IMG/VR virus record: IMGVR_UViG_3300011113_000640
Coordinates: 1 to 64,000 of that record
Length of the DNA stretch: 64,000 bases
Direction: 5' to 3' (one strand)
The notes beneath the pieces were generated by a model. The model did no database searches. It was given only the letters and a program-made list of their open reading frames with translations, and was not told where the DNA came from. Shown here in pieces: positions 36,413-58,545 of the stretch. Every line of letters starts with the position of its first letter. Positions within the stretch are counted from its first letter, which is position 1. A program made the position numbers and the translations under genes.

Positions 36413-36441
36413 ATTATAGCATGTGAATCGGTTGCTGTCAA
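36413..36441 (-). promoter_or_regulatory. sigma70-type promoter TTGACA-17-TATAAT
   Basis: Perfect consensus. Confidence 0.8.
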
Positions 36442-37121: not shown

Positions 37122-37149
37122 ATTATACTACAGACATCGTGATTGTCAA
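37122..37149 (-). promoter_or_regulatory. sigma70-type promoter TTGACA-16-TATAAT
   Basis: Consensus hexamers. Confidence 0.7.
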
Positions 37150-38985: not shown

Positions 38986-39014
38986 ATTATACTTGATATT
39001 GGCGTCAATGTCAA
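38986..39014 (-). promoter_or_regulatory. sigma70-type promoter TTGACA-17-TATAAT
   Basis: Perfect consensus. Confidence 0.8.
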
Positions 39015-40721: not shown

Positions 40722-40737
40722 GTTAGTGCCCACTAAC
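40722..40737. promoter_or_regulatory. Palindrome GTTAGTG-CC-CACTAAC upstream of the -35 box
   Basis: Same half-sites and same offset from the -35 box as 51280-51295. Confidence 0.6.
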
Positions 40738-41878: not shown

Positions 41879-42886
41879 TTATTTTTTGATCAAAGCCCAC
41901 TGCTCGCTACGGATGCGATCTGTGACTGCCTTGGGCAGGGGAACATAGTCTAGATCAAGAGCACTTTTACCACCCTTGTCCCAAGCATAAGCAAAGAACT
42001 TGAGTACTTCTTGTGTGGCTTTGACGTCTTTGGGTTCACGATATACCAACACAAACGTGGCACCAGTGATGGGCCAAGCATCAGCACCCTTTTGATTCAC
42101 CAGGCTGATACCCATGCCCGGTGTTTTAAACCAGTCAGCGTCCTTGGCAGCTGCGGCAAAAGTCGTGTCATCGGGTTGCACGTATCGTCCATCACGATTC
42201 TGCATCTTCACGTGAGGAATGTTGTTTTTCTTGGCATAGGCATATTCCACATAGCCAATCGAACCTTTCACACGGTTGACCACAGCGGACACACCTTCAT
42301 TGCCCTTGCCACCCACGGCTGTGGCTGGAATCCATTTTACAGCGGCACCTTTGCCCATGCGTTCAGCCCAGGACTTGGATACTTCGTTCAAATAGTCTGT
42401 GAAGATAAATGTTGTGCCGGATCCATCAGCACGATGCACCACAGTGATTGGCAAGTCGGGCAAGGTCTTGCCAGGATTCAAGGCCGCAATCCGAGCATCG
42501 TTCCACTTGGATATAGTTCCAAGATAGATGTCTGCCAAGACTGCGCCTGTGATCTGTAGTTCACCAGGTTTGAAACCATCAAGGTTTATGATAGGAACCA
42601 CACCGCCCAACACAGTGGGGAACTGGATCAAGCCGGCCTGGGCTAGATCTGCTACATTCATGGGTGCATCAGTGGCACCAAAGTGAACTGTGCCAGCACG
42701 GATCTGCTTGATACCGCCCGAGCTACCAATGCTCTGATAGTTGAGCTTGACACCGGTGATTTTTTGATAATCCACTGACCATTGCGAGTAGATGGGAAAT
42801 GGGAATGTGGCACCTGCTCCTGTGATTTCCACAGCAGACACCGAAGTCGCTAATACAGTCAATACAGCGGCTAAAAACTTTTTCAT
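41879..42886 (-). CDS. pstS: Phosphate ABC transporter substrate-binding protein
   Basis: GAGATFPFP, YQSIGSSGG, FGATDAP, HRADGSGTT, GGKGNEGV, IGYVEYAYA, WPITGATF. Confidence 0.97.
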   Translation of the reverse strand: MKKFLAAVLTVLATSVSAVEITGAGATFPFPIYSQWSVDYQKITGVKLNYQSIGSSGGIKQIRAGTVHFGATDAPMNVADLAQAGLIQFPTVLGGVVPIINLDGFKPGELQITGAVLADIYLGTISKWNDARIAALNPGKTLPDLPITVVHRADGSGTTFIFTDYLNEVSKSWAERMGKGAAVKWIPATAVGGKGNEGVSAVVNRVKGSIGYVEYAYAKKNNIPHVKMQNRDGRYVQPDDTTFAAAAKDADWFKTPGMGISLVNQKGADAWPITGATFVLVYREPKDVKATQEVLKFFAYAWDKGGKSALDLDYVPLPKAVTDRIRSEQWALIKK

Positions 42887-42930
42887 TGGATCTCCTTGAT
42901 AGTTGTTGTGCGAAGGCACACGTTTACTTA

Positions 42931-42987: not shown

Positions 42988-43995
42988 TCATTGTGCCCGA
43001 TTCACTTCTACTAAATTGTCACGGAATATGCGCCAACATGCGTCCCAGGTCCAACGCAGGCTGGCCTGTTCTACCTGGTCACGATCCAAGGTCAAGCAAC
43101 GTTCCACGGCATGTGCCAGGTTCCAGTCTAGATATCCCGTCACACCCGACTCCACTATGTCTATGGGCCCGGGCACAGGATATGCTGCCACCGGAGTGCC
43201 GCAGGCCAGGGCTTCGATGTTGACCACACCAAAGGTATCAGCTCGGCTGGCGAACACAAACACATCGGCCTGTGCATAGTAGCCGGCCAACTCCAGACCA
43301 CGCTGTGCGCCCACAAATTCCACTGTGGGATATCTGCGTTCCAATTCGGCTCGATAAGGACCATCTCCCACTATGATTTTGCGACACCAAGGCATGTCCA
43401 GCCGACAAAAATCTTCCAGACCTTTTTCACGACTCACACGACCTACGCTGAGCAGTACAGGTCGTACGTTTGAGCCAGATCGTAAACTACTGCTAAAGTA
43501 GGTGCGGTCCACACCGCGAGTCCAGACTTGAAGATTCTCAAAGCCACGAGCTGTTAACTCTTGCTCGATGCTGGCGGTTGTGACCAACACACGTTGACTA
43601 TTTTTGTGGAACCACTGCAGATACCACCAAGTCCACGACTCTGGAACATGATACATGCGTTTCAAAAACTTGGCAAAGTCTGTGTGGTAACTTGTATTGT
43701 AAGGAACACAGTTACGTTCGCACCACCAGCGGGCAAAGAAACCTACCGGACCTTCTGTAGCGATGTGTATAAAGTCTGGACGTAGCGTCTTAATTTTTTT
43801 GCTGATACCGTGCGGCCAGCACAGACGAACTTCAGGATAACCAGGGCAAGCAAAATTAGGGAACTGAGAGGGATCAACATAAACAACACGATAGCCGTCA
43901 CGGTCAGCATGATCTTCCAAGTTCCGGAAAGTTGTGACCACACCGTTGATTTGACCGGGCACATTGTCAGTTATGATCAGGATCGTTTTTGACAT
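42988..43995 (-). CDS. GT4 glycosyltransferase, Agt-like glycolipid (MGDG/GADG) synthase
   Basis: QINGVVTT, YPEVRL, HIATEGPVG, TSYHTDF, WTRGVD, VGRVSREKG, VGDGP, DTFGVVNIEALACGTPVAA. Confidence 0.85.
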   Translation of the reverse strand: MSKTILIITDNVPGQINGVVTTFRNLEDHADRDGYRVVYVDPSQFPNFACPGYPEVRLCWPHGISKKIKTLRPDFIHIATEGPVGFFARWWCERNCVPYNTSYHTDFAKFLKRMYHVPESWTWWYLQWFHKNSQRVLVTTASIEQELTARGFENLQVWTRGVDRTYFSSSLRSGSNVRPVLLSVGRVSREKGLEDFCRLDMPWCRKIIVGDGPYRAELERRYPTVEFVGAQRGLELAGYYAQADVFVFASRADTFGVVNIEALACGTPVAAYPVPGPIDIVESGVTGYLDWNLAHAVERCLTLDRDQVEQASLRWTWDACWRIFRDNLVEVNRAQ

Positions 43996-44150
43996 GACGT
44001 GACTACCTTGAAACTGTCAAACTTGAGCCAATAGGCCACCGTGGCCTGTGCTCGCACGCATTCTGCTTCGGTGGCAAACTCAATGCTTGCTCTTCCGGGC
44101 ACGTCTTGAGGATTGTTCACGTGAACTGCTATCAACATCAGCAACCACAT
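43977..44150 (-). CDS. 57-aa hypothetical protein between plcP and agt
   Basis: Hand translation MWLLMLIAVHVNNPQDVPGRASIEFATEAECVRAQATVAYWLKFDSFKVVTSCQKRS. Overlaps both neighbours. Confidence 0.5.
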   Translation of the reverse strand: MWLLMLIAVHVNNPQDVPGRASIEFATEAECVRAQATVAYWLKFDSFKVVTSCQKRS

Positions 44151-44904
44151 CATCTGTCTCCTTGGTCCATGTAACTATTTCCCACTGTCCTGAATGATGT
44201 TCAACTAGGGCTGTCATTGACTCAACCCAGTCTCCATCGTTCATGTAGACTACACCATCTATTTCTTTGATTTCTGCGTGGTGGATGTGTCCGCATATAA
44301 CACCATCGAATCCACGCTTCTTGCAGTACGCGGCAAGATTACGTTCGAACTGAAACAAAAAGTCACTAGCTTTCTTGACTTTGTATTTGAGATATTTGCT
44401 TAGACTCCAGTAGCCCAAGCGTAGTCGACGACGCACAGCATTAAATTGTGAATTTAGATTCAATACAAAATCATACAGTTTATCACCTAAAAATGCCAGC
44501 CATGGTGCCAATCTGGTGATGCCGTCAAACAAGTCACCGTGTGTGACTAGATAGTGTCGACCGTCTACGCCAATGTGTTCTGCTTGATTTACAACTTCGA
44601 TTAGGCCAAATCCAATGCCCAATGGTATAAGTGGTCTTAGAAATTCATCATGATTGCCAGCCACATAGATTACTCTGGTACCACGTTTGGCATGCCCCAT
44701 TACTCTACGGATCACATTGGTATGGCTCTGTTTCCAACGCCATCGGTTCTGTTGTATTTTCCAGGCGTCAATGATATCACCTACAAGATAAAGTGTTTCG
44801 CAGGTGTGGTGTTTGAGAAAGTTGTTGAGTTGTTCAGCCTTGCAGTCCTTGGTACCAAGGTGTACATCTGAAATGAATATTGATCTGTAAGTGCGGCCCG
44901 TCAT
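44080..44904 (-). CDS. plcP: Calcineurin-like metallophosphoesterase, PlcP-type phospholipase C (often mis-annotated as UDP-2,3-diacylglucosamine hydrolase)
   Basis: YRSIFISDVHLG, LVGDIID, GNHDE, HGDLFD, WLAFLGD..Y, GYWSLS.YLK.KVK.A..F..FE, DGVICGHIH, YMNDGDWVES.TALVE. Confidence 0.85.
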   Translation of the reverse strand: MTGRTYRSIFISDVHLGTKDCKAEQLNNFLKHHTCETLYLVGDIIDAWKIQQNRWRWKQSHTNVIRRVMGHAKRGTRVIYVAGNHDEFLRPLIPLGIGFGLIEVVNQAEHIGVDGRHYLVTHGDLFDGITRLAPWLAFLGDKLYDFVLNLNSQFNAVRRRLRLGYWSLSKYLKYKVKKASDFLFQFERNLAAYCKKRGFDGVICGHIHHAEIKEIDGVVYMNDGDWVESMTALVEHHSGQWEIVTWTKETDDVVADVDSSSREQSSRRARKSKH

Positions 44905-46050: not shown

Positions 46051-47724
46051 ATGAACAGCAGATACGACGAACTAGAAATCCTAATCTCAAAATTTACACG
46101 ACCACTCCCCGATCTTCCAGCATACGCCCAGCGTCTTGAAGAAGAATTAGAAATCATAGCCAATCTTAACTTCGCAAAACATTTTTTGCGTGTGAGAGAA
46201 ATCCTGGATCTCACCCGCGACATACCACACATCACCCGAGGATCAGCCGGAAGCAGTCTGCTATGCTGGCTCATGGGCATTTCAGATGTGGATCCCATAG
46301 CTGAACGCATACCCTTGTCAAGGTTCATGAATCCCAAGCGAGATGACCTTCCCGACATTGATCTAGACTTTCCACACTGGCAACAGGAAACTGTGATGAA
46401 CAGAATATTCCGGCGGTGGCCTGGGCAGAGTGCCAGAGTATCAAACTATGTGATGTATAAAGAAAAATCAGCCCGGCGTGAAGCTGCCAAACGCATGGGG
46501 GCCAAAGGCAAATTAAAACGTAATTTTAAATTTGAAGAAGTAGTTCCGGACTATGTGGAAGATGCTGAACGACTCACACAAAAACTCCTGGGCAAGAAAC
46601 GTTGCATATCCAAACACTGTGGTGGCATCTTGATCTTTGACCGTGCAGTGCCTAAAAGTTTAATCAATGGCACCAACCAAATACTCTTGGACAAGTATGA
46701 GATAGAAGATCTCGAACATTTTAAAATAGACATCCTAGCCAATCGCGGACTCAGCCAGCTGTGGGAAATAGAGGAGCGAGACCTGCTGGACTATCCTGAA
46801 TACGATGAGGCTACAGCAGAACTTTTGTGTCGCGGCGATGTGTTGGGTGTAACACAAGCAGAAAGCCCAGCCATGAAAAGACTAGTAAAAGCCATCAAGC
46901 CTAAAAGTCGTAGTGACTGTGTGCTGGCCACGGCACTCATACGTCCTGTGGCTACCATGGGTCGCAGACGTGCTAGTGCTTTCCAAGACTGGTCAACGGA
47001 TCAGCTACAGGATACCATAGTGTTTGAGGATGATGCCATAGAGCTGATCTCGGAAATCCTGGGTTGTGATCAATACACCGCGGACATGTGGCGCAGAGCC
47101 TTTGCCAAGAAAGATGAAGAAAAGATCTTTGAGTTTATGGTGCTTGTGGGTGACCATCCCAAGAAAGAAGAAATATTCCTAGCTCTGCGTGAACTCAGTC
47201 ACTTTGGCCTGTGTAGGGCACATGCCATAAATCTTGGTAGACTGATCTGGGCCTTGGCCTACCAAAAAGCACACAATCCTGAAGCGTTCTGGCGTGCGGC
47301 CCTGAAACACTGCCAAGGATCGTATGCTCGCTGGGTCTACTGGCAAGAAGCCAAGCTGGCCGGTGCTGTGCCTGCTATCATCGAGGGCGGCGAAGTGGCC
47401 GAACTGAGAACCAATGGTCGTTGGAGCAGTCGAAGGTTTATTCCGGCCTGCCAAGAACGTCGTGGCCCGGGCACGGTGGAGTTCTGTGGACTCGTGGCCA
47501 ACTATAGGGTGTTTAAGGCCGACAAAAAGAAATACATAACATTTGTTACACTGGGCACCGGCAATGGTCGATATTTGGATGTGATTGTGCCGCATGCGAT
47601 TTCGTTCCATGATCAACCAATCTTGTGGGGTCAGGGCAAATTGGGGTATAAAAATAATTCGGAATATGTTACAGTGTATAAACACAAGCGTCTAGACTTA
47701 AAGGACATAGAACACTATCAATGA
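46051..47724 (+). CDS. Compact DnaE-like (Pol III alpha family) DNA polymerase lacking the PHP domain
   Basis: TRGSAGSS, RFMNPKRDDLPDIDLDF, KHCGG, FKIDIL, QAESP, ALIRP, CRAHA; OB-like C-terminus. Confidence 0.85.
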   Translation: MNSRYDELEILISKFTRPLPDLPAYAQRLEEELEIIANLNFAKHFLRVREILDLTRDIPHITRGSAGSSLLCWLMGISDVDPIAERIPLSRFMNPKRDDLPDIDLDFPHWQQETVMNRIFRRWPGQSARVSNYVMYKEKSARREAAKRMGAKGKLKRNFKFEEVVPDYVEDAERLTQKLLGKKRCISKHCGGILIFDRAVPKSLINGTNQILLDKYEIEDLEHFKIDILANRGLSQLWEIEERDLLDYPEYDEATAELLCRGDVLGVTQAESPAMKRLVKAIKPKSRSDCVLATALIRPVATMGRRRASAFQDWSTDQLQDTIVFEDDAIELISEILGCDQYTADMWRRAFAKKDEEKIFEFMVLVGDHPKKEEIFLALRELSHFGLCRAHAINLGRLIWALAYQKAHNPEAFWRAALKHCQGSYARWVYWQEAKLAGAVPAIIEGGEVAELRTNGRWSSRRFIPACQERRGPGTVEFCGLVANYRVFKADKKKYITFVTLGTGNGRYLDVIVPHAISFHDQPILWGQGKLGYKNNSEYVTVYKHKRLDLKDIEHYQ

Positions 47725-48029
47725 AACCCACAGGAAGATTACACATTTATCCACCCACCGGTCCCAGAGGCACCGGTTACATAGTAGCAGACAAGACGGC
47801 CTTACGGGGTTTGGCACAAGCGGCGCAGACAGCAAGTGCAGGTAATTTTGGATTTGAAACTATAAAATTATACAGTGCCGACGGTCATGAATATGAGCTG
47901 GTGGTTACATCAGCTGTGGGCGAAGAAGAATGGCAGACCATGGAAAGCCATTATGCCAAGGATGTGGTGCCTACCGTTGTCACCATCCAAGACTATCAGG
48001 ATCTAAAGCAAGAGCTCAAGGTTTCTTGA
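47721..48029 (+). CDS. Hypothetical protein coupled to the dnaE-like gene
   Basis: ATGA overlap. Confidence 0.65.
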   Translation: MKPTGRLHIYPPTGPRGTGYIVADKTALRGLAQAAQTASAGNFGFETIKLYSADGHEYELVVTSAVGEEEWQTMESHYAKDVVPTVVTIQDYQDLKQELKVS

Positions 48030-49077
48030 CGCCGATGTATTCGTGCGAATAGCACACACGATCAGCATCTCTACGGGCGATTTCAGCATTACCACCATAG
48101 CCAGGCATGGCTCTAATGCTGCCATCCTTGAGTAGATAACTGCTTTTTCGACTTTTCCGATTGGTTGATGTTGCACGCCATAGCGGACTCTTTTCTCTAT
48201 GTTCACCAAAGCTGGGATGAGCAGTTTTTGAAAAATATCTGTAGCCGCGATCCACATACATCTGTGCTATGGCATCACTGAAAGCTGTGCCTATGCCCAG
48301 GCCCTGGAACTCGGGCAACACCACGGTCCTGTGTCCACGCCAATAACTATGTATGTCACGGTTGGTACTGTGTATGGCCGCATGGAATGCCACGGGTTTG
48401 TCACCAATCAAGCCCACATAGCAGTGGACGCTACGGCTCATTCTAGTGTCTAGATAGTGATACTTAGAAAAACTTCGCCACATTTCTGGACCTGTGCCGC
48501 GGATGGTGAGGGTAATCGGTGGTCGTCGCCCCAGTCGATGAAGTAGCCTCCGATTATCTAATACCTGTAGGTCGGTATCGTACACCCAGTCTGGATCCAA
48601 CCAGTCTATTATGTCTCTGTGGCAACTAGCAATATACAACACGCCAGGATTCTTATTGAACCATTGTCGCACACTGTAGGCCAAGCTCTTGGCTGTGTCG
48701 CGATCCACCACACTTGTAAATTCATCTATGCAAGTAATGCCTTGATCCAAGGCCATGGCCATTTCAAATCTGTGATATTCACCATTGCTGAGTGTGCCCG
48801 GAGTGCGGAACCAAGCAGGTATGCTTCGCAAGCCCGAGGCTAGGAGCAATTCTTCACCACGTTCTGGTGTAGAGAAGTTTTCAATCACAGTAGAGCACGG
48901 ACTTGTGGTCACAGCCTGATTGTGATCCAGGTTGCGTAGGATCGTGCTCTTGCCTGATCCTGACGTGCCCACGATCAGCACTAGGCCTTCTTCGGGCAGG
49001 TCAGGTATGGTCACAGGCGTTTCCACATAGTCCTTGATGTCGTATCGGGTGCGTATGGTTTCTAAGTAGTTGCTCAT
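48016..49077 (-). CDS. ABC-type ATPase fused to GNAT acetyltransferase
   Basis: GTSGSGKS, LSNGE, IDEF, ASCH; C-terminal RTVVLPEFQGLGIG. Confidence 0.85.
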   Translation of the reverse strand: MSNYLETIRTRYDIKDYVETPVTIPDLPEEGLVLIVGTSGSGKSTILRNLDHNQAVTTSPCSTVIENFSTPERGEELLLASGLRSIPAWFRTPGTLSNGEYHRFEMAMALDQGITCIDEFTSVVDRDTAKSLAYSVRQWFNKNPGVLYIASCHRDIIDWLDPDWVYDTDLQVLDNRRLLHRLGRRPPITLTIRGTGPEMWRSFSKYHYLDTRMSRSVHCYVGLIGDKPVAFHAAIHSTNRDIHSYWRGHRTVVLPEFQGLGIGTAFSDAIAQMYVDRGYRYFSKTAHPSFGEHREKSPLWRATSTNRKSRKSSYLLKDGSIRAMPGYGGNAEIARRDADRVCYSHEYIGVKKP

Positions 49078-49637
49078 AATACAAGATGTTCAAAGTAATT
49101 GTAATGCTTTTCTAGAGTCCATGTCAATGGATCAACAGCCGTTCCGTCATGTGTTTGATATGTTGCTTGAAACACATTGGTATAGCGCAGAAACGGCAAC
49201 CACATGTTGGGAGTTTTGGCTGCCCAACCAGCATCTTTGAGTGCCATGTGTTTGGCACGGCTCAATCTCACTGTGGGCGCATTGAGAGCTTGATCAACTG
49301 TGATACAATCGGCCAGCAATAAGTCACGAATCCTAGCCGCCGGAATCAAGTGTTCAAAATCGCACTCGTCGTCGGCCCCAATTTCGTGATAGTGTGCTTT
49401 CATGCCATCACGCTGCTGGATACAGTATTCGTGATATCTGCGCAGGCTGTCATCGATGTCGTTGCGAATTTCGCGCAGGAGTTGTTGATCATTTTCCACG
49501 GCATGATATTCGTTGACAAATTGACCTAGCTTGCCACGACAACGATTGGCCACGGTTCGATAAGTTTCGGGACTGCGTTGGGTCTTGCCGTAGACCGGAG
49601 CTACAAATTTTTCAAGCGATTCTTTTAACTGGTTCAT
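49074..49637 (-). CDS. Hypothetical protein with EHxxP (possible HNH/DUF1524-like) motif
   Basis: CDFEHLIPA...NAPTVRLS...H. Confidence 0.55.
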   Translation of the reverse strand: MNQLKESLEKFVAPVYGKTQRSPETYRTVANRCRGKLGQFVNEYHAVENDQQLLREIRNDIDDSLRRYHEYCIQQRDGMKAHYHEIGADDECDFEHLIPAARIRDLLLADCITVDQALNAPTVRLSRAKHMALKDAGWAAKTPNMWLPFLRYTNVFQATYQTHDGTAVDPLTWTLEKHYNYFEHLVL

Positions 49638-50097
49638 GGTATTCTTCCTCGTCGTTGTCGGATTCTAGAAAATTAAACATTCGATGAAACGCTTCAGTCT
49701 TTTGAATCTGATTGTTTAGTGATTTTTTAATTCTTTGACCATTTATCTTGTGCTTTTGATTGTTGTAATCTCCAGATCTGCGTCCTTTGTGTTTGTGACA
49801 CATTGGGCATAATTCATCTAAGTTATCAGGATTGTTGTTTTCTCGGTCACCGTCTTTGTGATCAACTTCGGTCATTCCTACAGCCCAAGGAGATTTTTCA
49901 TAGTCAATGCAACATGGAAATCCCAAATGACCATCATGGTTGCTACATTTACCTTGTTTCCAAGGTGTTACTCCAGGTGCATGTGCATGCTTGCCGTAAC
50001 TGGCCCCTTGACAATGTCCGCAATGAACTCTCCAACGTTTTCCATCATGTGCTTGCGGCTTTCCACAACCAGGATTAATACATATTCCTCTGGACAC
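49612..50097 (-). CDS. HNH endonuclease
   Basis: EVDHKDGDRENNNPDNLDELCPMCH and CxxC pairs. Confidence 0.85.
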   Translation of the reverse strand: MSRGICINPGCGKPQAHDGKRWRVHCGHCQGASYGKHAHAPGVTPWKQGKCSNHDGHLGFPCCIDYEKSPWAVGMTEVDHKDGDRENNNPDNLDELCPMCHKHKGRRSGDYNNQKHKINGQRIKKSLNNQIQKTEAFHRMFNFLESDNDEEEYHEPVKRIA

Positions 50098-50098
50098 A

Positions 50099-51157
50099 TT
50101 ATTCTCCTTGTGGAAACAGACCAGGAGCTACATTGCCATCAACAATACCAACCTTGGCACCTTCACCATGATACGGAAGATTCAATTGGCCACCGTTGCG
50201 TAGGTGCATCTCACGCAGGAAGTTGCTCATGGCAGTAGGAGCTACCCACCCTGCACCTGGATGACTGTGTTCCCATTGAATTTTTGCTTTGGCATGAATT
50301 AAGTGACTGCTTTTAAAAGTAGTCTTCGCAGATTCCAATAAAGTTTTCATCCAACCATCAGGCAATTTGCCACGAGAATTTGTGTTGTTTAATCGTTGCA
50401 ATTCACACAGGCCAATAAACACACCTTGATCAATTTCTTCTTGTAAGGGAAACACTGTTTTTATAGCATCCAGTATGGCATACAAAATCTTGCCGGATTC
50501 GTCAATTTCAATACCTTTGTATGCGTACTTGAAATGACTAAAGAAGTAATCATGATCGCCGCGTAAATTATCGCTGGACCGGGAACCTTTGTCTTGCAGG
50601 TCGATTTGTAAATTATCAAATTGATCTTGCAAGGTGCGAGCACACACATTACGACTTTCTCGACTGCCATTTTTGTAACGAACCAAAGCGTTACGATGCA
50701 AATCTCCTGGACCCAAACGCTTTACACCAGTGTCATTGAGCATTTCAAATGCCAGGCTAGCAAAGTTGGGATCATCGGTATGAACCACTGCTCCGGGAAT
50801 TTCTGTATAGCCTAAAATGGTGGCCGAAATGGTTCTGTGCTGACCATCGTAGGTATCGTTACGATCGCGATCTTTCAAACGACAAGCCGACACAGGACTA
50901 CAAATTCTAGGATCCCAGTTCTTCATGATACTGATAATGTGTTTGTGCAAGACATCTCGTTGGACTTCATAGTCAATCCAAAGATCGTCGATAGGAACCA
51001 TTTTTGATTCGGGAAAGTTGTATCCCAGAGTGTGTTTGGCTTGAGCTTGTACACGGAAAGAATCAAGTTCTCGTTGCGTGATGTTGTAGTGGGCCTTGAT
51101 TTGCTTTTCAACTTCCGCGGCCACGTCGGTGAGTTTTCTTGTGAGGCGTTGTGCCAT
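50099..51157 (-). CDS. ParB/Srx-fold DGQHR-motif protein
   Basis: YEVQR, YDGQHRT, FEMLND. Confidence 0.7.
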   Translation of the reverse strand: MAQRLTRKLTDVAAEVEKQIKAHYNITQRELDSFRVQAQAKHTLGYNFPESKMVPIDDLWIDYEVQRDVLHKHIISIMKNWDPRICSPVSACRLKDRDRNDTYDGQHRTISATILGYTEIPGAVVHTDDPNFASLAFEMLNDTGVKRLGPGDLHRNALVRYKNGSRESRNVCARTLQDQFDNLQIDLQDKGSRSSDNLRGDHDYFFSHFKYAYKGIEIDESGKILYAILDAIKTVFPLQEEIDQGVFIGLCELQRLNNTNSRGKLPDGWMKTLLESAKTTFKSSHLIHAKAKIQWEHSHPGAGWVAPTAMSNFLREMHLRNGGQLNLPYHGEGAKVGIVDGNVAPGLFPQGE

Positions 51158-51242
51158 TTTACATCCTTTCATAGCAGTCCTAGGACTGTCGGTTAATAAA
51201 CAGCCGCCAATTTCCTAATTTTAAATTGGCTAGCTAATAGTA

Positions 51243-51271
51243 ATTATACTATAAATACCAGACTTTGTCAA
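51243..51271 (-). promoter_or_regulatory. sigma70-type promoter TTGACA-17-TATAAT
   Basis: Perfect consensus. Confidence 0.8.
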
Positions 51272-51277
51272 TCACTT

Positions 51278-51297
51278 ATGTTAGTGCGCACTAACAT
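51278..51297. promoter_or_regulatory. Perfect 20-bp palindrome ATGTTAGTGCGCACTAACAT upstream of the -35 box
   Basis: Seen directly; same offset as 40722-40737. Confidence 0.65.
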
Positions 51298-51528
51298 AAT
51301 GCTCTGCGTCCCCCGGTGGTTACTATAGTAGAAATCCGTGCTGTAATCCAATGACAGCACATCTTGGTTGCCCGATAGGGCTCAGCAAGACTGCAATCTC
51401 TACCTCACCATCCACTCCACGACAGGGACCGTTCACGCATTGCCAGCGGCCTTTGGGTCGGAAGACTACCACCCGTGGTAGCTACTCCACTTCAATCGTC
51501 CGGGTCAGACTAGTTCCTGCTACAGAAC
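51298..51528 (-). ncRNA. Candidate ~230-nt multi-stem structured RNA
   Basis: Nested stems GTCCCT/GGGGAC, GTAGAGAT/ATTTCTAC, TCTTG/CAAGA, CCC/GGG, GTGCTGT/ACAGCAC and CTACCA/TGGTAG. G-U pairs favour the minus strand. Confidence 0.5.
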
Positions 51529-52644: not shown

Positions 52645-53394
52645 TCACGCCTTTTGTAATCCAGACACATTGACCCGATTGGCCTGTTCTCGGGGCATGC
52701 ACAGCATGTTTTGGTAATCTACAATGTAATAATCATAATCTGAAACCGAGCACAGAGCTTGTTTGATTGGTTCCGCTCCGGTAATAAAATATTCCACCCA
52801 GATCCAAGGTCGGTGTTTCTTGATAGTGGCAATAGCACCGGTTAGTGCCGGAACTTCATAACCTTCTACGTCTAGCTTGAAAAAATCTAGTCTAGGTAGA
52901 TCCATGGCATCGATACTGGTAACATCAACCACACGATCATTCATCCACCCATGTTCGTTAACAGTGGTTTCATCACTCAGTGACACAGTACCAAAATCTT
53001 GCGCCATGCTGTAGTCCACTGCGGGTAGTTGTGCAATGCCAGGTTCTGTACCAAGTCCACAGTTGTGTAGATAAACATGCCGATATCCGTTGATGGCTAA
53101 ACTGCCACCAAGTGCTTGAAATAGTTGACGTTGTGGTTCAAATGAGATAATTCTTGTACCACGACCTTGTGTCCTATGGGCAACCGGCACAGTAAAAAAT
53201 CCAATGTTGGCACCGCCATCAACAACAACAGCGTCATTGGGCAAGGTATCAACAATAGCAAAAATATTGTTTAATTCCGGTTCGATATGAGTACGACCCG
53301 TTTTGACCAAGGCCTCGGCCTGGAACAAACAAGTTCTGGCTACGATAAATTTTCCATAAACACTGTCTAGGACCACAAAATTGTCTATGTTCAT
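52645..53394 (-). CDS. FkbM family methyltransferase
   Basis: VVDGGANIG, SFEPQ, FFKLDVEGYE, WVE. Confidence 0.9.
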   Translation of the reverse strand: MNIDNFVVLDSVYGKFIVARTCLFQAEALVKTGRTHIEPELNNIFAIVDTLPNDAVVVDGGANIGFFTVPVAHRTQGRGTRIISFEPQRQLFQALGGSLAINGYRHVYLHNCGLGTEPGIAQLPAVDYSMAQDFGTVSLSDETTVNEHGWMNDRVVDVTSIDAMDLPRLDFFKLDVEGYEVPALTGAIATIKKHRPWIWVEYFITGAEPIKQALCSVSDYDYYIVDYQNMLCMPREQANRVNVSGLQKA

Positions 53395-54744: not shown

Positions 54745-54774
54745 ATTATACTACATGATTGCCATTTGTGTCAA
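54745..54774 (-). promoter_or_regulatory. sigma70-type promoter TTGACA-18-TATAAT
   Basis: Consensus hexamers. Confidence 0.65.
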
Positions 54775-57366: not shown

Positions 57367-57730
57367 CTCTTACCCCACTTTCTATCCATTGTGCCAAGGG
57401 CTCATATTCCAATCGACCCCAATCAGTTTCGCCGCCAAGCACATCAATCTGCGTGCCTTGCTTTTCGGCATTGTTGATCAAGTTGCTCAAGACCGTGCCG
57501 CCATAGCCGTTGGTTCCATAACTGTCTCGATGGCAACGATACACCGATCCAGACGACCCATCAAATTCCCAATAAGGGTCTGCAAAGTGAGCACGAACAA
57601 TGCCCGAGTTCAACTTCCAGCTGTCCGACCCAGCATAGCCTGCCGACCAAGAGGCAAATACCTTGTATACGACCTCGCCTGGTGCGTGTATGCGTATGAC
57701 AGTCCAACGGTCTGGTGTGTAATCACTCAT
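57359..57730 (-). CDS. Hypothetical protein
   Basis: YTPDRW..GSDSWKLNSGI..GSSGSVYRC. Confidence 0.7.
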   Translation of the reverse strand: MSDYTPDRWTVIRIHAPGEVVYKVFASWSAGYAGSDSWKLNSGIVRAHFADPYWEFDGSSGSVYRCHRDSYGTNGYGGTVLSNLINNAEKQGTQIDVLGGETDWGRLEYEPLAQWIESGVRDV

Positions 57731-58545
57731 TAAACCTCCAGGTATTTTAGTTCAAACAATTCAGCACGACGCTCGTGACCCACATAGCCTCGAGGATTGC
57801 AGACCACTCTAGTGGTGCCAATTAGATAATCTGATACATTGTGCATGTGACCATGACAAATCAATCTGATCTGCGGCCTATCCAACACAAACTCACTGAG
57901 ATCTGTGTAAAAGTTTCCGTTCATCAAGAGATCGCCTTTGTAGCATTCTGCTACACTGGCACTGCTGGGCGCATGATGCACTGCTACCACAAACTTTTTG
58001 TCGCCTTGTCCTTCAGTAACCAAACGGATGTAATCCAACATGGCCCGATGATCAGCCAGAGTGTCTTCAGGTTGCAAGCGACTGGCATATCCACCACCTG
58101 AAATGCCACGACCACTGTTTTTGCACACACGGTAGTCGTTCATTCTTTGGCCAGCGTTCCACATGCATAGGCTGTCTTCCCGGTTGAAATCGGTCCATAA
58201 GGTGCCACCCACAAAGGTCACATCCTCTATGGTCACTGTGTCTTTTTCCAACAAGTGGACATTGTCACTGCCAAGATCCGCCAGCATGGCCTCCAGGCGC
58301 TCACGGCTACGGGCATAGTCACCCTGGTAGTGCTCGTGATTGCCCATGATGTAGATCACTCGCGGAAAACGATCGCTGACCTGCTGGAAAAATGTGCGGC
58401 AAGTCCTGCCCATGTTAGTTTCATTGTTGACATCCACGGCCTGGCAGATATCGCCAGCAAGAATCAGCACATCAGCTGATTGGGTATTTTCAAGTTCAAT
58501 GGCACCAAACTCAAGGTGGATGTCAGACGCTAATGCTACCCTCAT
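57730..58545 (-). CDS. Calcineurin-like metallophosphoesterase
   Basis: SDIHLE, LAGDI, GNHEHY, GGTLWTD, HHAP, HGHMH, NPRGY. Confidence 0.9.
   Translation of the reverse strand: MRVALASDIHLEFGAIELENTQSADVLILAGDICQAVDVNNETNMGRTCRTFFQQVSDRFPRVIYIMGNHEHYQGDYARSRERLEAMLADLGSDNVHLLEKDTVTIEDVTFVGGTLWTDFNREDSLCMWNAGQRMNDYRVCKNSGRGISGGGYASRLQPEDTLADHRAMLDYIRLVTEGQGDKKFVVAVHHAPSSASVAECYKGDLLMNGNFYTDLSEFVLDRPQIRLICHGHMHNVSDYLIGTTRVVCNPRGYVGHERRAELFELKYLEV

What the first reader, a model, noticed from the sequence alone, without database searches (positions are those of the whole stretch)
48016..51297. Four-gene operon (DGQHR/ParB, HNH, EHxxP protein, ABC-ATPase-GNAT) resembling a conflict system
Seen: a perfect promoter with the palindromic site drives four abutting or overlapping genes. 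Established: GmrSD type IV restriction enzymes combine a ParB/Srx-fold DUF262 domain (DGQQR) with an HNH-type DUF1524 domain (EHIxP), DGQHR proteins include DndB, and ABC-GNAT fusions are proposed nucleic-acid or tRNA acetylases. Inference: this is a split GmrSD-like or modification-sensing module with an acetyltransferase, used against co-infecting phages or host defences.
Basis: partly seen in the sequence, partly recalled or inferred. Interest (0 to 1): 0.6.

Follow-up and report, generated by a model that had tools for sequence, protein, structure and literature searches.

The report
Mosaic early operon of a jumbo phage
The four genes are a real, strongly promoted operon of an uncultured freshwater jumbo phage, but it is a mosaic (a conserved ParB-like gene plus an unknown partner, a mobile HNH homing endonuclease, and an optional ABC-ATPase/acetyltransferase of a family predicted to acylate DNA bases), not a split GmrSD restriction enzyme.

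Summary
A 12/12 sigma-70 promoter with a perfect 24-bp palindrome just upstream drives four abutting or overlapping minus-strand genes at 48016-51172.

- **g1** has a ParB/Srx fold (AF2 pLDDT 86; best hits KorB, ParB, Noc, sulfiredoxin). It matches no Pfam ParB, GmrSD_N or DGQHR model.
- **g2** is an HNH endonuclease in a hypervariable slot. In 45 related loci the g1-g3 gap is empty (9), holds g2-type HNH (11), holds an EndoVII/HNH-like gene (11), or holds one of four other families. Sister phages differ, and metagenome contigs skip g2. It is a free-standing homing endonuclease.
- **g3** (invariant E-H-x-x-P, R-Y, H) belongs to an uncharacterised phage family of about 107 clusters. Its fold is unresolved, and GmrSD_C does not match it.
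- **g4** is an intact ABC-ATPase+GNAT (phrog_11143, 1.4e-79), a family predicted in 2013 to acylate DNA bases. In unrelated phages it lies directly after a ParB gene and before a formyltransferase. In this clade it is accessory: 6 of 31 informative loci, and absent from one complete genome.

Best reading: a ParB-linked DNA-modification or counter-defence cassette invaded by a homing endonuclease. The GmrSD reading is not supported but not excluded. Interest is moderate.

The parts
51276..51299 (.). Perfect 24-bp palindrome (core GTTAGTG-NN-CACTAAC). The core ends 8 bp upstream of the -35 hexamer. It is a candidate operator for an unidentified dimeric regulator.
   Evidence: There are 5 perfect core sites in the 320-kb genome and 0 for the reversed control. 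Four of the five lie 8 or 18 bp upstream of a sigma-70-like -35 box. The site is kept upstream of g1 in 12 of 39 relatives.
51243..51271 (-). Sigma-70-type promoter, TTGACA-17-TATAAT, 12/12 matches.
   Evidence: A near-consensus promoter is kept at this place in 37 of 39 relatives.
51158..51236 (-). Leader of about 80 nt (inferred start about 7 nt after the -10 box) with two hairpins. It does not fold better than shuffled sequence.
   Evidence: z = -1.33. Metagenome contigs replace or skip 81-83 nt here (table 5).
50099..51157 (-). g1: ParB/Srx-fold (ParB-CTPase-fold) protein of 352 aa with invariant Q-R, D-G-Q-H-R and E..N-D boxes, plus a helical C-terminal half. It is part of the conserved core of this phage clade.
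49612..50097 (-). g2: free-standing HNH homing endonuclease with a Cys-rich N-terminus, sitting in a hypervariable slot between g1 and g3.
   Evidence: HNH_3 1.7e-6, over the cut-off. HNH and homing-endonuclease PHROG and PADLOC models match. It is present in 11 of 45 related loci, and the slot is empty in 9 or holds other families, including an EndoVII/HNH-like one. Sister taxa differ. Contigs in two studies skip 478-509 nt across it.
49074..49637 (-). g3: 187-aa protein of an uncharacterised phage family. It has a helical hairpin and a small alpha/beta C-terminal part. Y83, H96, R151, Y152 and H178 are invariant and E95 and P99 nearly so. It is a candidate His-Me-type metal nuclease, but the fold is unresolved.
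   Evidence: Deep search finds 107 clusters. Alignment A3. AF2 pLDDT 74. No significant fold match in PDB, VIA-wide, Atlas or BFVD. No Pfam family in any of 61 members. It sits next to g1 in 40 of 45 loci.
48016..49077 (-). g4: ABC-ATPase (residues about 25-175) fused to a GNAT acyltransferase (about 195-310). It is an accessory gene of the clade, from the family predicted to acylate a DNA base.
   Evidence: phrog_11143 1.4e-79 over the full length. ABC_tran and Acetyltransf_1. All family-invariant motifs are kept. The profile matches ABC nucleotide-binding domains down to 1.9e-20. It is found in 91 phage records. The prediction is cited in PMC7824862.

Best explanation
This is an early, host-RNA-polymerase-driven operon of an uncultured freshwater jumbo phage (320 kb). 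It is built from parts with different histories.

Shown:
- g1 is a ParB/Srx-fold protein. Together with g3, an uncharacterised 185-aa protein with an invariant E-H..P / R-Y / H signature, it forms the conserved core of the locus.
- g2 is a free-standing HNH homing endonuclease that has invaded the g1-g3 junction. In relatives that junction is empty or holds other endonuclease-like genes.
- g4 is an intact ABC-ATPase+GNAT enzyme. It is always found at this locus when present, but is absent from many close relatives.

Inferred:
- g4 uses ATP and an acyl donor to put an acyl group on a base of the phage's DNA. This follows the 2013 comparative-genomics prediction for its family.
- It is assisted by the ParB-fold protein, which loads onto or opens DNA in an NTP-dependent way. 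Phage ParB homologues have now been shown to activate thymine dioxygenases in this manner.
- The product would protect phage DNA from host nucleases.
- g3 is most likely a metal-dependent nuclease or another DNA-acting partner of g1. Its role does not depend on g4.
For: **Operon and promoter:**

**g1 fold:**

**g2 mobility:** slot contents in 45 loci were empty 9, g2-type 11, c5 (phrog_3322 endonuclease 7e-24, EndoVII/HNH) 11, c11 7, c38 2, c58 2, c66 2, other 1. Strongly supported sister pairs differ, for example L028 empty against L041 g2, and L042 against L048/49. Contigs from two studies join g1 to g3 and skip 478-509 nt. Another homing endonuclease (NUMOD3) sits between g3 and g4 in L023.

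**g4 family and integrity:**

**g4 is accessory:** present in 6 of 45 loci and absent in 25 loci that have at least 2.6 kb downstream. It is absent from the complete 346.9-kb relative G001 and present in G003 and G004, at the same locus.

**Recurrent context of ABC/GNAT in unrelated phages:** a ParB_N protein lies directly upstream in Leptospira LE3, Gordonia Jace, Arthrobacter EastWest, Pasteurella Pmp13, Pseudoalteromonas SL25 and Gordonia AnClar, the last with an HNH gene in between. Formyl_trans_N lies directly downstream in phiE255, a Porphyromonas phage, AnClar and Komp_PAO1_1. Aspartate decarboxylase lies downstream in Jace.

**Literature:** ABC ATPase+GNAT predicted to make an uncharacterised acyl modification of a DNA base (PMC7824862, citing Iyer et al. 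2013). Phage ParB homologues activate DNA thymine dioxygenases on dsDNA (PMC13229309). Fusions of the ParB-CTPase fold to acetyltransferase, HNH and DUF6551 domains bind NTPs (PMC12704722).
Against: - No experiment exists for any of the four proteins or for the ABC/GNAT family, so the substrate (DNA, RNA or protein) is inferred from context only.
- g1 is only 14-20% identical to the short ParB_N proteins that accompany ABC/GNAT elsewhere, and it carries D-G-Q-H-R where they have A-G-N/H-H-R. It is therefore not their orthologue.
- g1 and g3 persist in most relatives without g4, so their main role cannot be to serve g4.
- No acyl-donor gene (formyltransferase, PanD) lies in this operon.
- The complex prediction for g1+g3 gave no answer.
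- The g3 fold is unresolved.
Confidence: 0.55

Rival explanations
1. g1 (DUF262-like, DGQHR) and g3 (DUF1524-like, E-H-x-x-P His-Me finger) are the two halves of a split GmrSD-type, modification-sensing nuclease. It would be used against co-infecting phages or host DNA, with g4 as an accessory acetyltransferase.
For: g1 has the ParB/Srx fold that DUF262 also has, with an invariant D-G-Q-H-R. g3 has an invariant H96 and nearly invariant E95 and P99, followed by N-x-P-T..L-S-K..D, a pattern that recalls the DUF1524 signature (the comparison with DUF1524 is from memory). g1 and g3 are adjacent in 40 of 45 loci and directly abut in 9. A few HNH proteins appear among the non-significant BFVD rows. 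The nearest Pfam-named Atlas cluster for g3 is GH-E, an HNH/EndoVII family, at score 0.75, which is a lead only.
Confidence: 0.2
2. There is no functional system. g1 is a KorB/ParB-like NTP-dependent DNA-binding regulator, or a genome-organising protein. The other three genes are unrelated early genes that merely share its promoter.
For: The best fold hit is the plasmid repressor KorB, and the alignments run through the helical region after the N-domain (8qa9_B, model residues 49-263). The operon's promoter carries a palindrome with TTAG...CTAA arms directly upstream of -35, and 4 of the 5 genomic copies sit at fixed distances from promoters. The locus is mosaic.
Against: Relative G002 has a 90%-identical g1 and no copy of the palindrome in 317 kb. 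The complete genome G001 has g1 (70% identical) and no copy either. So g1 is unlikely to be the binder of that site. When present, g4 is always at this locus and in this orientation. ParB-ABC/GNAT adjacency recurs in unrelated phages. Both facts argue for a functional link.
Confidence: 0.15
3. g4 acts on RNA or protein rather than DNA. It could acetylate a tRNA base with the help of ATP, as TmcA does, or acetylate a host protein such as RNA polymerase or a defence protein, as part of host takeover.
For: GNAT enzymes mostly acylate proteins and small molecules. Phage GNATs such as Rac modify host RNA polymerase (PMC7824862). The operon is an early, host-promoter-driven unit. Formyltransferase neighbours resemble Fmt, which acts on aminoacyl-tRNA (the resemblance is inference).
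Against: The neighbours in other phages are DNA-directed: ParB, HNH, terminase and replication genes. Mom, the one characterised DNA-acylating phage enzyme, is also a GNAT and itself uses charged tRNA to modify DNA (PMC13219725 and PMC7261163, listed). A tRNA link therefore does not exclude DNA as the target.
Confidence: 0.15

Closest known systems
ABC-ATPase+GNAT phage family (phrog_11143), predicted DNA-base acyl-modification system of Iyer, Zhang, Burroughs & Aravind 2013 (as cited in PMC7824862); examples are Tenacibaculum phage pT24 and Burkholderia phage phiE255 gp29
   Same: g4 matches the family model over its full length (1.4e-79) and keeps every invariant residue: Walker A, signature, Walker B, H-loop and GNAT Q-G-x-G-x-G. 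A ParB-fold gene lies in the same operon.
   Different: The ParB-fold gene here is twice as long and belongs to another branch (D-G-Q-H-R, no Pfam match). It is separated from g4 by two genes. There is no formyltransferase or PanD neighbour. g4 is dispensable within the clade. I could not read the 2013 paper itself because it is not held.
ParB-dependent phage thymine dioxygenases (5mYOX176/ParB176; PMC13229309)
   Same: A phage ParB-fold protein is encoded next to a post-replicative DNA-modifying enzyme. This gives experimental precedent for ParB acting as the activator of such an enzyme on dsDNA.
   Different: The enzyme class is different (2OG/Fe dioxygenase against ABC+GNAT). Those ParBs lack a region in the place of the DNA-binding domain, whereas the g1 model has a helical region that aligns there. 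No activity has been shown here.
GmrSD / BrxU type IV restriction enzymes (DUF262 + DUF1524)
   Same: A ParB/Srx-fold domain with a D-G-Q-x-R motif, plus a protein with an E-H-x-x-P motif, encoded side by side.
Free-standing homing endonucleases of T4-like phages (Seg/Mob type, intronless homing)
   Same: g2 is a small HNH gene wedged between two conserved genes and overlapping the start of the downstream one. It is present or absent among sister genomes, and other endonuclease genes occupy the same or the next junction.
   Different: It is not homologous to the named T4 Seg/Mob proteins. Its nearest phage matches are 30-34% identical HNH genes of Salmonella and Escherichia phages. Cleavage specificity has not been tested.
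KorB (RK2) and DndB, ParB-fold transcriptional repressors
   Same: KorB is the best structural match of g1. There is a palindromic operator directly upstream of the -35 box of g1's own operon.
   Different: Relatives with a 90%-identical g1 lack the palindrome altogether. No sequence-level match was found.

Membership tests
GmrSD type IV restriction enzyme | N-terminal DUF262 / GmrSD_N domain (PF03235) | tested here: not met
GmrSD type IV restriction enzyme | C-terminal DUF1524 / GmrSD_C His-Me nuclease domain (PF07510) | tested here: not met
   No hit for g3 or for any of 61 family members. PF07510 finds nothing in the genome at E<=10, with controls ringing in 6. The E-H-x-x-P motif is present, but no beta-beta-alpha-metal match was found by fold search.
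GmrSD type IV restriction enzyme | Cleavage that depends on modified (e.g. glucosyl-hmC) DNA | not testable with these tools
   Needs enzymology.
DndB / DGQHR-domain proteins | Match to the DGQHR-domain or DndB models | tested here: not met
   The NCBIfam scan of g1 at E<=1 returned no family. Pfam returned none. Only the pentapeptide D-G-Q-H-R is shared.
ParB/Srx (ParB-CTPase) fold superfamily | N-terminal alpha/beta domain of ParB/sulfiredoxin type with the G-x-x-R nucleotide-binding box | tested here: met
ParB/Srx (ParB-CTPase) fold superfamily | NTP binding or hydrolysis | not testable with these tools
   Inferred from conserved boxes only.
Free-standing HNH homing endonuclease | HNH catalytic motif | tested here: met
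   HNH_3 scores 28 bits against a cut-off of 24.8. HNH and homing-endonuclease models of PHROGs and PADLOC also match.
Free-standing HNH homing endonuclease | Sporadic presence between conserved genes in close relatives | tested here: met
   Present in 11 of 45 loci. The slot is empty in 9 and holds six other families in the rest. Sister genomes differ. Contigs in two studies skip it.
Free-standing HNH homing endonuclease | Cleaves the endonuclease-less allele and is copied into it | not testable with these tools
   Needs a cleavage or co-infection assay.
ABC-ATPase+GNAT predicted DNA acyl-modification family (phrog_11143) | Full-length match, with intact ABC motifs and GNAT acyl-CoA motif | tested here: met
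ABC-ATPase+GNAT predicted DNA acyl-modification family (phrog_11143) | Linked ParB-fold gene | tested here: met
   g1 is in the same operon. A ParB_N gene lies directly upstream in 6 of 15 other phage groups examined. g1 belongs to a different ParB branch.
ABC-ATPase+GNAT predicted DNA acyl-modification family (phrog_11143) | Acylation of a DNA base | not testable with these tools
   This is a prediction in the literature only. I found no experimental paper.
Known anti-phage defence systems (PADLOC-DB) | Match of the proteins to system models beyond generic motifs | tested here: not met
   g1 and g3 have no hits. g2 hits only generic HNH models. The g4 hits (mad3, mad8, PtuA) cover only the P-loop region, residues 20-66.

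The most novel reading that the evidence does not exclude
g1 and g3 form a new two-protein nuclease: a ParB-fold NTP-dependent DNA clamp that delivers a highly derived His-Me finger. This would be a functional analogue of GmrSD that arose separately. In phages that also carry g4, it would spare DNA bearing a so far undescribed acyl mark written by the ABC+GNAT enzyme. The result would be a phage-borne write-and-discriminate system that destroys host or rival-phage DNA.
Probability: 0.1. Interest if true: 0.8.

Novelty: new variant of a known kind. Interest (0 to 1): 0.4.

Why it matters
The ABC-ATPase+GNAT family occurs in at least 91 sequenced phages from many host phyla. It was predicted more than a decade ago to write an unknown acyl mark on DNA, yet I found no experiment on it.

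This locus, and above all the simpler ParB-ABC/GNAT(-formyltransferase) pairs in cultured phages that turned up during the survey, give a clean set of constructs to test that prediction. The assay that recently proved ParB-dependent thymine oxidation could be reused.

The g1-g3 pair is abundant in freshwater jumbo phages: about 1000 sequence clusters, and runs from 14 studies of lake and drinking water. g3 is a family without any annotation.

The finding also shows how a homing endonuclease can make a mosaic locus look like a designed four-gene system.

Tried and rejected
- **tblastn against 50,697 phage records.** g1 gave no match (E 1e-5) and g3 gave no match (E 1). blastn of the locus also gave no match.
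- **Fold of g3.** Foldseek PDB, VIA-wide PDB, ESM Atlas and BFVD gave only its own family, helical-hairpin look-alikes, or non-significant rows. A profile search of PDB sequences with A3 returned only designed helical repeats.
- **Complex prediction for g1+g3.** No answer (score 0.01). This is not evidence either way.
- **The search for related loci with alignments A3 and A4.** I used the single protein instead.
- **hmmsearch with the g1 and g3 profiles** against all ORFs around ABC/GNAT genes of 11 cultured phages found no g3-like or g1-like neighbour. hhalign of g1 against the gene upstream of a distant g3 gave nothing.
- **g2 against the AnClar HNH gene** (same length, same position): not similar.
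- **Hypothesis that g1 binds the promoter palindrome.** Disfavoured, because G002 (g1 90% identical) and G001 have no copy of the site.
- **PADLOC.** No system.
- **Iyer et al. 2013** could not be read; it is not held under DOI or PMC id.
- **RNA evidence.** No RNA run holds the stretch, so co-transcription rests on gene spacing and the single promoter. Depth differences between genes come from contigs and are not used as evidence.


Full report
**What is there.** The window is the first 64 kb of a 320.5-kb virus record, estimated 93% complete. Relatives reach 337-357 kb with terminal repeats. The stretch occurs in lake-water, drinking-water and viral metagenomes of 14 studies. This is therefore an uncultured freshwater jumbo phage.

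On the minus strand lie four genes:
- g1, 50099-51172. The likely true start is 51157, giving 352 aa.
- g2, 49612-50097, 161 aa.
- g3, 49074-49637, 187 aa.
- g4, 48016-49077, 353 aa.

The g2 start is 1 nt after the g1 stop. g2 overlaps g3 by 26 nt. g3 and g4 share ATGA. Upstream is a 12/12 sigma-70 promoter at 51271..51243. It is one of five perfect ones in the window, against 0.02 expected. Directly before its -35 box is a perfect 24-bp palindrome.

**g2.** It is an HNH endonuclease (HNH_3 over the cut-off). I fetched 45 related loci and laid out their genes.

| Content of the g1-g3 gap | Loci |
|---|---|
| empty | 9 |
| g2-type HNH | 11 |
| c5, an EndoVII/HNH-like family (phrog_3322, 7e-24) | 11 |
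| c11 | 7 |
| c38 | 2 |
| c58 | 2 |
| c66 | 2 |
| other (distant locus L064) | 1 |

On a g3 tree, strongly supported sister genomes differ in this slot. Contigs from two independent studies join the end of g1 to the start of g3 and skip 478-509 nt, which is the length of g2. One relative carries a NUMOD3 homing endonuclease at the next junction, between g3 and g4. g2 is therefore a free-standing homing endonuclease and not a component of a system.

**g3.** Family scans find nothing. The exhaustive search finds 107 clusters of mostly 180-195 aa proteins, down to 24% identity. Across 61 of them, Y83, H96, R151, Y152 and H178 are invariant, and R66, E95, P99, P121 and L133 nearly so. The model (pLDDT 74) shows a long helical hairpin and a small alpha/beta part in which E-H ends a strand.

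No library gives a significant match. The E-H-x-x-P...N-x-P-T..L-S-K..D pattern is compatible with a derived His-Me nuclease of the DUF1524 kind. That comparison rests on my memory of the motif. The direct tests (PF07510 on g3, on all family members and on the genome) failed.

g3 sits beside g1 in 40 of 45 loci. It also stands without it in five loci, and in two distant phages next to unrelated genes.

**g4.** It matches phrog_11143 over its full length at 1.4e-79. It has an ABC nucleotide-binding domain (profile matches to solved ABC domains down to 1.9e-20) and a GNAT domain. It keeps all residues that are invariant across homologues from eleven phages. Homologues occur in 91 phage records of many host groups.

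[quoted passage not shown] 2013). I found no experimental work on it.

I examined 15 other phage groups. A roughly 180-aa ParB_N protein lies directly upstream, often overlapping the start, in LE3, Jace, EastWest, Pmp13 and SL25, and with an HNH gene between in AnClar. A formyltransferase lies directly downstream in phiE255, a Porphyromonas phage, AnClar and Komp_PAO1_1, and aspartate decarboxylase in Jace. ParB-ABC/GNAT(-acyl-donor enzyme) is thus a recurrent module, typically near replication or packaging genes.

In the window's own clade, however, g4 is accessory. It is present in 6 of 45 loci and absent in 25 loci that extend far enough. It is absent from one complete genome and present in two. 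When present it always lies downstream of g3 in the same orientation. This pattern fits an ancestral g1-g3-g4 operon with repeated loss of g4. Gain by recombination among relatives is not excluded.

**How it most likely works.**

Shown:
- a single strong host-type promoter with an operator-like palindrome
- tight coupling of the genes
- a ParB-fold protein
- a mobile HNH gene
- an intact ATPase-acyltransferase

Inferred:
- g4 acylates a base in phage DNA, using ATP to reach the base.
- The ParB-fold protein helps it act on duplex DNA. ParB homologues have been shown to do this for phage thymine dioxygenases (PMC13229309).
- The mark protects the phage genome.
- g1 and g3 have a further, g4-independent role on DNA. 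For g3, nuclease activity is the best guess.

I give the whole statement 0.55. The descriptive parts are near certain, and the DNA-acylation mechanism is about 0.4.

**Rivals.**
- The split-GmrSD reading keeps about 0.2. The motifs and the adjacency are real, but all family tests failed, and the structural match to BrxU is weak.
- The view that g1 is merely a KorB-like regulator of an unrelated gene set gets 0.15. The KorB match and the operator are suggestive, but genomes with 90%- and 70%-identical g1 lack the palindrome entirely.
- An RNA or protein target for g4 gets 0.15.

**Novelty and interest.** g4 with a ParB-fold partner is a member of a computationally known kind. The long D-G-Q-H-R ParB branch, the unannotated g3 family and their pairing are new variants. 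g2 is ordinary. The most novel reading not excluded is a ParB-delivered derived nuclease that discriminates an acyl mark written by g4 (probability about 0.1).

**Limits.**
- No transcript data exist for this phage.
- The 2013 paper could not be read.
- The census of ABC/GNAT neighbourhoods covers 15 phage groups, not all 91 records.

Noticed in passing
window 40722-40737 and 51280-51295; G000:C1 70562-70577, 101005-101020, 101278-101293: The core palindrome GTTAGTG-NN-CACTAAC occurs five times perfectly in the 320-kb genome, against none for the reversed control. Four copies lie 8 or 18 bp upstream of a TTGAC(A/C)-17-TATA(A/C)T promoter, so they are one helical turn apart. Three of those promoters share a near-identical leader ending in AAAGGAGC, like a repeated promoter cassette. 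Relatives G003, G004 and G005 have 3-6 sites, and G001 and G002 have none. The binding protein is unknown.
   Followed up: partly
window 36413-36441, 37122-37149, 38986-39014, 51243-51271, 54745-54774 (all minus strand): There are five perfect TTGACA-N16-18-TATAAT promoters in 64 kb, against 0.02 expected. The phage evidently uses the host sigma-70 holoenzyme for this gene block.
   Followed up: no
window 46051-47724 (+) and 47721-48029 (+): A short DnaE-like polymerase (557 aa; DNA_pol3_alpha and finger domains only, no PHP domain in this ORF) and a 102-aa gene lie convergent to g4. The 102-aa gene overlaps the end of g4 by 14 nt. The closest phage match is a 484-kb uncultured phage (LR756508.1, 36% identical). 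In relative L013 the Metallophos and GT4 genes follow g4 directly, so this plus-strand block may be an insertion. ABC/GNAT genes also neighbour DNA polymerase genes in Enterococcus phage 9184 and Thomasclavelia phage TR-TP1.
   Followed up: partly
related loci L020-L022, L025, L028, L041, L046, L050, L060-L063 (gene after g3): A 374-412-aa family ('c3') follows g3, directly or one gene later, in 12 of the 13 relatives that carry it. All 13 lack g4. It has no Pfam match. It matches phrog_12517 at 1.5e-14 and only weakly a DNA-methyltransferase PHROG (3.7e-4). It could be an alternative enzyme at the place of g4.
   Followed up: partly
L004 (Gordonia phage AnClar) 2312-2962: The gene annotated 'tRNA-methyltransferase' matches Formyl_trans_N (5e-10), like the gene after ABC/GNAT in phiE255, Komp_PAO1_1 and Porphyromonas phages. 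The annotation looks wrong.
   Followed up: partly
L009 (Tenacibaculum phage pT24) 4965-6137; L011 (Enterococcus phage 9184) 3998-5439; L070 (Thomasclavelia phage TR-TP1) 2300-3696: In these phages the ABC and GNAT halves are annotated as two separate genes. In phage 9184 the GNAT half is labelled 'DNA polymerase'. This is either a natural split or a frameshift in the records.
   Followed up: no
window 41879-42919 (-), 42988-43995 (-), 44080-44904 (-), 52645-53394 (-), 57730-58545 (-): The neighbours include a PstS-like phosphate-binding protein (phrog_5385, 1.4e-64), a glycosyltransferase, two metallophosphoesterases and an FkbM-type methyltransferase (5.5e-18).
   Followed up: no
window 51196-51280: Contigs in two metagenome studies skip or replace 81-83 nt that cover the promoter and the start of the leader of the operon. 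The regulatory region is therefore polymorphic in nature.
   Followed up: no
window 51157 vs 51172: The longest ORF of g1 starts at 51172 (M-K-G-C-K-M...). The second ATG at 51157 has an AAAGGA box 7 nt upstream, and most homologues start there.
   Followed up: yes
L044, L052, L060, L061: In these relatives g1 is missing, and an endonuclease gene (g2-type or c5) directly precedes g3. The homing-endonuclease slot survives loss of g1, or the endonuclease insertion went along with its deletion.
   Followed up: no
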